A stretch of DNA of 58,945 nt, counting the filler, from Sluysia triapertura (lineage: Eukaryota): assembly GCA_046118255.1 (NCBI GenBank). It is 4 parts of 4 records of this genome, joined end to end, with 100 filler letters (N's around TTAATTAATTAA, not from the genome) between each part and the next. Parts side by side here need not be neighbours in the genome. Positions count along the whole stretch, not along the records: positions 1 to 15,566 come from JBJNIA010224794.1; 3 more parts are not named here. One strand, written 5' to 3'. The translations under genes and the position numbers were made by a program. Below the pieces are notes generated by a model. The model saw nothing but the letters and a program-made list of their open reading frames with translations. It did not search any database and was not told where the DNA came from. Positions 5,127-5,481 of the stretch are shown piece by piece; within the stretch, counting starts at the first letter, position 1, and each line of letters opens with the position of its first letter.

Positions 5127-5481
5127 TACCGTCATCGGCGCTGTCATTAGAATGACATTGCTGATGACGGTAATTAGTTGGTATATGTGTTATTAGCTTT
5201 TTGTGGTATATTAGCTTTTTGTTATCACCTAATCAGAGCGTATATAACTCTTAATATTCATGGAATGATCTGATTGGACAGTCTGAAAACGATTTACTGC
5301 CTAAAAATCATGCACAACCCAATCAGAGTACACAGTTCTCATCATTCACTCAAATACTCTGATTGGGTAGTCTAAAACAGCACATACATTTCCAATTTTC
5401 ATTTCACAATTAAAAAATTATTGTGATTATCAAAAATTATTGTGAGTATCAAAAATTATTGTGATTATCAAAAATTTTAAG
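5127..5481 (+). promoter_or_regulatory. Upstream cassette, copy 1: hairpin, two inverted-CCAAT palindromes and a 19-mer tandem repeat
   Basis: Hairpin with 22-bp arms at 5127-5172. CTAATCAGAG..TCTGATTGG at 5229-5277. Perfect 13-bp inverted repeat CCCAATCAGAGTA-n24-TACTCTGATTGGG at 5318-5367. AAAAATTATTGTGA(T/G)TATC x3 at 5413-5469. The regulatory role is inferred. Confidence 0.55.

What the first reader, a model, noticed from the sequence alone, without database searches (positions are those of the whole stretch)
5127..5481. Shared hairpin plus inverted-CCAAT cassette in front of two unrelated intronless ORFs
Seen: the same ordered module precedes both the KDM1B-like ORF (5127-5481) and the 557-aa orphan (17434-17720). 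First, a long hairpin with stem ACCRTCATCRG...CTGATGRYGGT, including a compensatory G-C to A-T change between copies and different loops. Second, an inverted repeat CCCA(A/T)TCAGAGTA-n22/24-TACTCTGATTGGG, duplicated in copy 1. Third, short AAAAATT-containing tandem repeats. Then an ATG 115-160 bp after the palindrome. Arms are conserved while loops and spacers differ, and the downstream proteins show no visible similarity. Established: CCAATCA is the NF-Y box. Inference: a portable promoter or element end that captures and expresses varied cargo, i.e. a candidate undescribed gene-capturing or gene-birth element.
Basis: partly seen in the sequence, partly recalled or inferred. Interest (0 to 1): 0.8.

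Follow-up and report, generated by a model that had tools for sequence, protein, structure and literature searches.

The report
Promoter cassette inside a high-copy repeat
The hairpin plus twin inverted CCAAT boxes are real, but they lie at a fixed place inside a roughly 3.1-kb repeat present thousands of times in this genome, whose single gene is a truncated copy of the histone demethylase KDM1B, so the "unrelated" genes behind the cassette are diverged copies of one repeat and not captured cargo.

Summary
Window 5127-5172 is a strong palindrome. 5314-5371 is a perfect-core inverted CCAAT pair, with a decayed duplicate at 5227-5279. 5413-5476 is a 19-bp tandem repeat, and the family's start codon is at 5482.

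The cassette sits about 1 kb inside a dispersed repeat of about 3.1 kb. The window copy is 4414-7454 and lacks the first 285 nt or so. The repeat has sharp ends (TGTAGTGGCCAAC...AACCACA). Its 5' 17-mer occurs about 4,200 times in this genome and the exact CCAAT palindrome 1,011 times, against 13 and 0 for reversed controls.

The downstream ORF belongs to the repeat. Its first 270 residues or so match the KDM1B/LSD2 zinc finger, zf-CW and SWIRM (E = 9e-20), followed by an orphan C-terminal domain. Subfamilies with different ORF bodies still share the 5' kilobase, the cassette, the last 30 or so codons and the 3' part; four of them also share the SWIRM-end motif.

I read the cassette as the repeat's own NF-Y-type promoter. 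No transcript data exist, and the class of mobile element is undetermined (no TIR, LTR or TSD found). One subfamily's ORF body has no detectable likeness to the others, so segment swapping is not excluded.

The parts
4414..7454 (+). One copy of the ~3.1-kb dispersed repeat, lacking about the first 285 nt of the full unit
   Evidence: dozens of copies at 72-94% identity. Homology starts at 4413/4414 in six copies and ends at 7424-7454. Full copies extend about 285 nt further 5'.
4414..5074 (+). Non-coding, G-poor (A/C-rich) 5' region of the repeat
   Evidence: 4-6% G in the first 600 nt of the full copy in L031. No ORF of 60 aa or more. Conserved in all sampled subfamilies.
5127..5172 (.). Palindrome/hairpin ACCGTCATC...GATGACGGT with inner palindrome TGTCATTAGAATGACA. 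This copy has a 19-nt loop deletion relative to sister copies.
5227..5279 (.). First (upstream) CCAAT/ATTGG inverted pair, decayed here (CCTAAT)
   Evidence: A subfamily-specific duplication of about 90 bp, intact in L002-L006.
5314..5371 (.). Second inverted pair CCCAATCAGAGTA-N24-TACTCTGATTGGG: two opposed NF-Y-type CCAAT boxes
   Evidence: Arms nearly invariant in 28 aligned copies; 1,011 exact genomic matches against 0 for the control.
5413..5476 (+). 19-bp tandem repeat x 3.4 (AAAAATTATTGTGATTATC), directly upstream of the start codon; predicted transcription start zone
   Evidence: Other copies carry different A-rich repeats here, in a gap of 69-215 nt. The transcription start is inference only.
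5482..5514 (+). Family start codon (MELLLRNFNA) followed by a premature TAA in this copy
   Evidence: Same start (M-D/E-x-L-x-R/Q-N-F-N) in L003, L005, L008, L015, L018, L030, L040.
5527..6396 (+). 289-aa ORF: KDM1B/LSD2-like N-terminal zinc finger, zf-CW, linker and SWIRM start; no amine-oxidase domain
   Evidence: Sister ORF L040 against PDB KDM1B: E = 9.2e-20, collinear with residues 13-280.
6551..6841 (+). 96-aa ORF fragment: orphan C-terminal domain ending ...VSFEFIYLYDYF, out of frame with the first ORF in this decayed copy
   Evidence: No relatives among 1.84 billion representative proteins.
6842..7454 (+). 3' non-coding part of the repeat, ending ...CACAACCATA before an (AT)13 run

Best explanation
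The cassette is the conserved internal control region, most likely the RNA polymerase II promoter, of a lineage-specific, high-copy interspersed repeat of about 3.1 kb.

Layout of the unit:
- 5' end TGTAGTGGCCAACACTC;
- about 1 kb of G-poor non-coding DNA;
- a 17-bp-stem palindrome carrying TGACG-type half sites;
- 35-55 nt later, two opposed optimal NF-Y boxes (CCAATCAGAG ... CTCTGATTGG) about 44 nt apart;
- 70-215 nt of A-rich short repeats;
- the start codon of one ORF of roughly 470-490 codons;
- about 600 nt of 3' sequence ending ...AACCACA.

Shown: the anatomy, copy numbers, fixed order and orientation, KDM1B homology, and paralogy of the ORFs.

Inferred: NF-Y binds the two boxes and sets a start site 40-110 nt downstream (window about 5410-5480); the palindrome acts as an upstream factor-binding or structure-forming element; the unit is or was mobile. 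The cassette stands before different-looking ORFs because the whole unit was copied and then diverged.
For: - Whole stretch 4414-7454 is repeated at 72-94% identity.
- The 5' end is sharp, with unrelated flanks, in 17 copies; the 3' end likewise in about 35.
- The 5' 17-mer occurs 4,200 times against 13 for the control, often 58-61 nt from contig ends, which marks assembly breaks in a near-identical repeat.
- The palindrome occurs 1,011 times against 0. With a hairpin arm 25-55 nt upstream it occurs 225 times against 0.
- The hairpin lies 908-1073 nt from the 5' end, always in the same order, in 16 of 24 copies.
- The CCAAT arms are nearly invariant across subfamilies while linkers and spacers vary.
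- The ORF start follows 69-215 nt later.
- KDM1B homology: E = 9e-20.
- ORF paralogy.
- dN/dS between copies is 0.53-0.65, so the ORF was under some constraint while the family spread.
- CAG right after CCAAT is optimal for NF-Y, and NF-Y-bound CCAAT clusters drive several retroviral LTR families (PMC12065363, PMC3730095).
Against: - There is no transcript evidence: the only two sequencing runs found are not on record as RNA, so promoter activity and the start site are untested.
- Mobility is inferred from dispersed copies with unrelated flanks. No target-site duplication was seen in the three copies with both ends (L031, L040, L043). No TIR or internal LTR was found, and no transposase, integrase or reverse transcriptase is present in the unit.
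- Complementary changes in the hairpin arms fit a structural role at least as well as factor binding.
- Only copies similar enough to the window's were sampled.
Confidence: 0.6

Rival explanations
1. Cargo-swapping element. The conserved 5' kilobase with the cassette, together with the conserved last 30 or so codons and 3' part, form a frame into which foreign coding segments are captured and expressed. KDM1B would be one such capture and the subfamily C body another.
For: - The N-terminal 270 residues are plainly host-gene derived and intron-free.
- Subfamily C (L009, L010, L011, L014) shares the 5' region, the cassette, the terminal 30 residues and (in L009 and L014) the 3' part, but its ORF body of about 250 aa shows no likeness to subfamily A even by profile comparison.
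- By first-look counts the 5' end is about ten times more abundant than one 3' end type (1726 against 167).
- Spacer and linker diversity points to many more subfamilies.
Against: - Subfamilies A, B, E and F are ordinary paralogues over about 200 residues, including the SWIRM end, and A and B share the start-codon motif.
- No second host gene was recognised in any subfamily body (Pfam).
- Fast divergence of a weakly constrained ORF (dN/dS 0.5-0.65) could erase likeness without any capture.
Confidence: 0.15
2. The palindromes are cis-acting structural sites for the element's own copying or recombination (a cruciform or hairpin recognised by a recombinase or replication protein, or an RNA packaging signal) rather than promoter parts.
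For: - Stem complementarity is kept through double changes: 6 of 17 pairs, 23 cells, and 0 of 500 shuffles reach the observed values.
- L041 changes both CCAAT-flank arms in parallel.
- Strong folding z-scores.
- Spacer length is constrained while spacer sequence is free.
Against: - The sites lie 1 kb inside the unit, not at its ends.
- The invariant arm core is exactly the optimal NF-Y site (CCAATCAG), which sequence-independent pairing would not require.
- Their position 70-215 nt before the start codon fits a promoter.
- The copies are related, so the double changes represent few independent events.
Confidence: 0.1
3. The 3.1-kb unit is the long terminal repeat of a very large LTR retrotransposon, mostly present as solo or broken LTRs, and the cassette is its U3 promoter.
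For: - Ends are TGT...ACA.
- CCAAT-rich promoters are typical of some LTRs (PMC12065363).
- One 5' flank (L019) ends in a purine run AGAGGGGG like a polypurine tract.
- The fragmented assembly would hide paired copies.
Against: - Neither the 17 upstream flanks nor the roughly 35 downstream flanks share any internal-region sequence, apart from a 110-nt 3' extension in one subfamily.
- No target duplication was found around L031, L040 or L043.
- No contig held two direct copies at LTR-like distance.
- A 470-codon ORF inside an LTR would be unusual.
Confidence: 0.08
4. It is not mobile DNA but a host multigene family derived from KDM1B and spread by segmental duplication. The cassette would be the ancestral gene promoter.
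For: - The ORF derives from a host gene.
- There is some purifying selection.
- No transposition enzyme or target duplication was found.
Against: - About 4,200 copies of the 5' end, with the same base-precise boundary and unrelated flanks.
- Most sampled ORFs are broken.
- Copies sit among other repeats.
- Segmental duplication does not give identical end points thousands of times.
Confidence: 0.05

Closest known systems
NF-Y-driven promoters of endogenous retroviral LTRs (human LTR12/ERV9, MER and mouse RLTR10/IAP families)
   Same: Multiple optimal CCAAT boxes (CCAAT followed by CAG) carried inside a high-copy repeat and serving, there by experiment, as its promoter (PMC12065363, PMC3730095).
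   Different: Here the two boxes form a strict inverted pair about 44 nt apart, downstream of a long palindrome, about 1 kb inside a unit with no sign of retroviral genes or paired LTRs. NF-Y binding is not tested, and the host is an unidentified AT-rich eukaryote.
KDM1B / LSD2 (PDB 4gu1, 4fwe, 7xe1)
   Same: Collinear N-terminal zinc finger, zf-CW, linker and SWIRM start over residues 13-280, E = 9e-20. By my own comparison with KDM1B sequence recalled from memory, the shared EYDNLV..FIKKTGL.N.NVLP motif corresponds to the SWIRM end.
   Different: There is no amine-oxidase domain. About 150 orphan residues replace it. The ORF is intron-free, present in thousands of mostly broken copies, and carried in a repeat unit.
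Transposons that carry host gene fragments (Pack-MULEs, gene-capturing Helitrons, CACTA transduplicates)
   Same: A repeat with conserved ends and a host-derived coding segment inside. The 5' end is more uniform and more abundant than the 3' end.
   Different: No TIRs or 9-bp target duplications (MULE). No 5'-TC...CTRR-3' ends or 3' hairpin (Helitron). The host-derived part is an intact multi-domain reading frame under some constraint, not a scrambled fragment.
VANC-type anti-silencing proteins of Arabidopsis VANDAL transposons
   Same: A fast-diverging accessory protein encoded by the element itself that could act on host chromatin. This is an analogy from my own knowledge.
   Different: No sequence relation, and no functional evidence here at all.

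Membership tests
NF-Y-dependent promoter | CCAAT pentamer with favourable flanks (CCAATCAG) | tested here: met
   Both arms read CCCAATCAGAG and are nearly invariant in 28 copies. 1,011 exact inverted pairs against 0 for the control. Flank preference from PMC12065363.
NF-Y-dependent promoter | Transcription starts some tens of nt downstream; NF-Y occupancy | not testable with these tools
   No run on record as RNA was found. No ChIP or CAGE data.
Transposable element (any class) | Many dispersed copies with identical end points and unrelated flanks | tested here: met
Transposable element (any class) | Target-site duplication or empty-site evidence of insertion | tested here: not met
   No duplication at L031, L040 or L043. 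Only three complete copies were available and no empty sites were searched, so this is a weak negative.
LTR retrotransposon LTR | TG...CA ends | tested here: met
   TGTAGTGG...AACCACA.
LTR retrotransposon LTR | Direct pairs flanking PBS, gag/pol and PPT, or solo copies with 4-6-bp duplications | tested here: not met
   Flanks share no internal sequence; no duplications; no paired copies in 75 loci. The fragmented assembly limits this test.
Helitron | 5'-TC, 3'-CTRR with a subterminal hairpin, insertion between A and T | tested here: not met
   The ends are TGTAG... and ...CCACA, there is no 3' hairpin, and the flanking bases are not A/T-specific.
TIR DNA transposon (including MULE, hAT, CACTA) | Terminal inverted repeats | tested here: not met
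   Self-comparison of the full copy finds no terminal inverted or direct repeats beyond TGT/ACA.
KDM1B/LSD2 histone demethylase | N-terminal zinc finger, zf-CW and SWIRM | tested here: met
   (E = 9e-20, collinear). zf-CW E = 4.7e-4 and SWIRM E = 0.046 in Pfam, both below the curated cut-offs.
KDM1B/LSD2 histone demethylase | FAD-dependent amine-oxidase catalytic domain | tested here: not met
   PDB matches stop at about residue 286 of the 776-aa KDM1B construct, near the SWIRM start. The C-terminal 206 aa match nothing. This is therefore a KDM1B-derived protein, not a demethylase.

The most novel reading that the evidence does not exclude
The repeat is an active or recently active mobile element of an undescribed class: no TIR, LTR, target duplication or recognisable transposition enzyme. 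It expresses, from a pioneer-factor (NF-Y) promoter, a catalytically dead mimic of the host H3K4 demethylase KDM1B. This decoy would occupy KDM1B's chromatin targets and block the H3K4 demethylation that precedes silencing. Its fast-changing body and many subfamilies would record an arms race with the host, and the conserved frame may allow the decoy segment to be exchanged.
Probability: 0.1. Interest if true: 0.75.

Novelty: new variant of a known kind. Interest (0 to 1): 0.5.

Why it matters
This turns an apparent 'portable promoter that captures genes' into something testable. It is a very abundant, probably young repeat family whose only gene is the chromatin-reading half of a histone demethylase, driven by a strikingly regular twin NF-Y cassette.

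It matters in three ways:
- For annotation, thousands of KDM1B-like ORFs in this genome are repeat copies, not genes.
- For mobile-element biology, the unit has precise ends but none of the usual hallmarks.
- For host-element conflict, an element-borne mimic of a silencing-pathway enzyme would be a new kind of counter-defence if it proves functional.

The strict geometry (palindrome, 35-55 nt, two opposed CCAAT boxes about four helical turns apart) is also a clean natural test case for how NF-Y pairs position transcription.

Tried and rejected
- Word-indexed protein search with the 405-aa ORF of L034: no hit at E <= 0.001.
- ESM Atlas feature search: no usable hit.
- Full HMMER search of the C-terminal profile against 1.84 billion representatives: one marginal hit at E = 3.8e-4.
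- AlphaFold2 model of the C-terminal 162 aa: mean pLDDT 40.6, unusable, so no fold search was run.
- Pfam on the ORFs of subfamilies B-F: nothing above noise.
- Rfam (gathering thresholds) and tRNA scans of the window: nothing.
- Same palindrome pattern in IMG/VR (2 contigs) and JGI metagenomes (81 contigs): none has the hairpin arm, DNA likeness to the unit (apart from one ~34-nt low-complexity match, L157) or the proteins. Many are longer unrelated palindromes, so there are no relatives outside this genome.
- Sequencing-run search: two runs, neither on record as RNA, with coded organisms. Read laying was not used, because contigs cannot show a start site.
- Literature search for SWIRM or zf-CW proteins in transposons: nothing relevant.
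- BLAST-based conservation profile along the unit: uninformative, because only aligned pieces are counted.
- Helitron, TIR-transposon and LINE-retrocopy readings were rejected on end structure. There is no poly(A), and 5' ends outnumber 3' ends, the reverse of what 5'-truncated retrocopies show.
- The organism could not be identified. KDM1B-type architecture and a LINE reverse-transcriptase fragment suggest an AT-rich animal, but that is a guess.
The at least 10 other spacer families are therefore unexamined.

Full report
**Setting.** The window is contig C224794 of a 619-Mb assembly in 263,945 contigs, about 25% G+C. It is a patchwork of repeats:
- a family at 1-327 with copies at 91-94% identity, and another at 357-1190;
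- a LINE-like element at about 7592-9359, interrupted by another insertion (reverse-transcriptase-like ORF at 8971-9366);
- further families beyond 13,200.

**Observation.**
- The hairpin at 5127-5172 has 22-nt arms at 86% complementarity. Folded as DNA it gives -17 kcal/mol with z = -8.1.
- The inverted pair ACAACCCAATCAGAGTA / TACTCTGATTGGGTAGT lies at 5314-5330 and 5355-5371 with a 24-nt spacer (z = -5.1).
- A second, upstream unit at 5227-5279 is decayed in this copy (CCTAAT; z = -0.5) but intact in sister copies. It arose by a duplication of about 90 bp that is specific to this subfamily.
- A 19-bp repeat of 3.4 units fills 5413-5476.
- The family's start codon is at 5482 (MELLLRNFNA). 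This copy has TAA at codon 11, and the 289-aa ORF restarts at 5527.

**The cassette is inside a repeat.**
- The 362-bp cassette has dozens of scored matches in its own genome.
- A wider query shows that all of about 4414-7454, ORF included, is repeated at 72-94% identity, with 9,744 first-look candidates.
- In other copies homology runs about 285 nt further upstream, to a base-precise 5' end TGTAGTGGCCAACACTC with unrelated flanks in 17 copies.
- The 3' end (...CGCATYAACAACCACA, or ...CAACAACCA in the window's subfamily) is equally sharp in about 35 copies. One subfamily carries a 110-nt extension.
- The full unit is about 3.1 kb (L031, reverse strand, 2728-5842).
- It has no internal terminal repeats, direct or inverted, and its first 600 nt hold only 4-6% G.
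- The 5' 17-mer (up to 2 mismatches) occurs 4,200 times against 13 for the reversed control. Many hits sit 58-61 nt from a contig end, the mark of an assembler breaking in a near-identical, hence probably young, repeat.
- The hairpin's right arm lies 908-1073 nt (median 1008) from the 5' end in 16 of 24 copies, always in the same order.

**Conservation of the cassette.**
- In an alignment of 28 copies from several subfamilies, CCCAATCAGAG and CTCTGATTGG are nearly invariant, while the linker and the spacer vary freely.
- Genome-wide, the exact pattern CCAATCAGAG-N18-30-CTCTGATTGG occurs 1,011 times against 0 for the control. Nearly all spacers are 26-30 nt, and they fall into at least ten unrelated sequence families.
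- 225 of these also have GATGACGG 25-55 nt upstream, against 0 for the control.
- The 17-bp hairpin stem is paired in 87% of cells. No shuffle out of 500 reaches the observed percentage paired, number of doubly changed cells, or covariation score. The copies are related, so these are few independent events.
- The arms contain TGACG-type half sites and the inner palindrome is TGTCA...TGACA. Reading these as factor sites is my inference.
- CCAAT followed by CAG is the optimal NF-Y context, and NF-Y-bound CCAAT clusters are known promoters of several retroviral LTR families (PMC12065363, PMC3730095).

**The ORF.** Copies are mostly broken; the longest frames are 405-408 aa. Pieced across copies by alignment, not by building a sequence, the protein is about 470-490 aa.
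- Its first 270 residues or so align collinearly with residues 13-280 of crystallised KDM1B/LSD2: zinc finger, zf-CW, linker and SWIRM start, at E = 9.2e-20. Pfam gives only sub-threshold zf-CW and SWIRM hits.
- Homology stops before the amine oxidase.
- The last 150 residues or so, ending ...VSFKFIYLYDYF, match nothing in the PDB, in 5.8 billion word-indexed proteins, in the ESM Atlas, or in 1.84 billion representatives searched with a profile. An AlphaFold model was unusable.
- Pairwise dN/dS between copies has medians of 0.65 (KDM1B-like part) and 0.53 (C-terminal part). That fits some constraint on the lineages that spread, plus neutral decay afterwards.

**Are the ORFs behind the cassette unrelated?** Copies fall into subfamilies.
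- All sampled ones share the 5' kilobase and the cassette.
- Subfamilies A (the window's), B, E and F share about 200 C-terminal residues at 25-50% identity, including the motif EYDNLV..FIKKTGL.N.NVLP. By my own comparison with KDM1B sequence recalled from memory, this corresponds to the end of the SWIRM domain.
- A and B also share the start motif (M..LLRN.N).
- Subfamily C (L009, L010, L011, L014) shares only the last 30 or so residues and (in L009 and L014) the 3' part. Its body of about 250 aa shows no likeness to A even by profile comparison.
But the units are homologous at both ends, and most are plain paralogues.

**Interpretation.**
- Best supported is that the cassette is the repeat's own promoter, and that its presence before different ORFs reflects copying and divergence of a whole unit.
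- Not settled:
  (a) promoter activity, since no run on record as RNA was found;
  (b) the class of element, since no target duplication was seen in three complete copies, there are no TIRs or LTR pairs, the ends are unlike Helitrons, and no enzyme is encoded;
  (c) whether the middle of the ORF can be replaced. The KDM1B part shows at least one host-gene acquisition, and subfamily C may be a second, or simply extreme divergence.
- The TGT...ACA ends keep an LTR reading alive at low odds.
- The complementary changes in the palindromes keep a structural, non-promoter role alive.

**Limits.**
- After no more DNA could be cut from the genome, so the many other spacer families were not inspected. 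My sample is biased towards relatives of the window copy, and towards older copies that assembled.
- The organism is unknown.
- The same palindrome pattern in viral and metagenome collections led only to unrelated sequences.

Noticed in passing
window 2128-3693 (-): Intact 521-aa ORF with an N-terminal RING-like cysteine motif and about a dozen repeats of an 'I/L-D/N-W-x-x-I/V-S' unit. It has no Pfam match. Its best relatives (E = 2e-21, 30% identity) include an 881-aa DUF5754 protein on a 135-kb metagenome contig that also carries UvdE, 5'-3' exonuclease, ERCC4 and ribonucleotide reductase genes, which looks like a giant virus. It appears single-copy in this genome among the scored hits.
   Followed up: partly
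window 7592-9359 and 11256-11307, with 9359-11256 between: A LINE-like repeat (reverse-transcriptase-like ORF at 8971-9366; higher G+C, about 41%) is split by a nested insertion of another repeat family of about 1.9 kb. Other copies join query positions 1959 and 3857 directly.
   Followed up: partly
window 1-327 and 357-1190: Two further dispersed repeat families. The first has at least 30 copies at 91-94% identity, so it is probably young.
   Followed up: no
G000, many contigs (e.g. C2531:60-76, C3528:60-76, C5046:60-76): The 5' end of the 3.1-kb repeat lies again and again 58-61 nt from a contig start. The assembler broke at this repeat, so the youngest and most intact copies are probably missing from the assembly.
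   Followed up: partly
window 3986-4141 and L031 1946-2110: A 165-nt stretch at 88% identity lies upstream of the window copy but about 850 nt downstream of the L031 copy. It is another small repeat, and the association may be coincidental.
   Followed up: no
L065 and L070: Two loci hold a 3'-terminal fragment of one copy within 44-585 nt of the 5' end of another, once in the same orientation and once inverted. This could be nested insertion or a hint about the insertion mechanism.
   Followed up: no
window 7451-7477; L048 and L068 3' flanks: Some copies are followed directly by simple repeats, (AT)13 here and (ATT)n elsewhere, but most are not. The meaning is unclear.
   Followed up: no
window 12499-12541: (AAT)14 microsatellite. 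Similar runs occur inside the G-poor arm of several repeat copies (L031, L036, L040).
   Followed up: no
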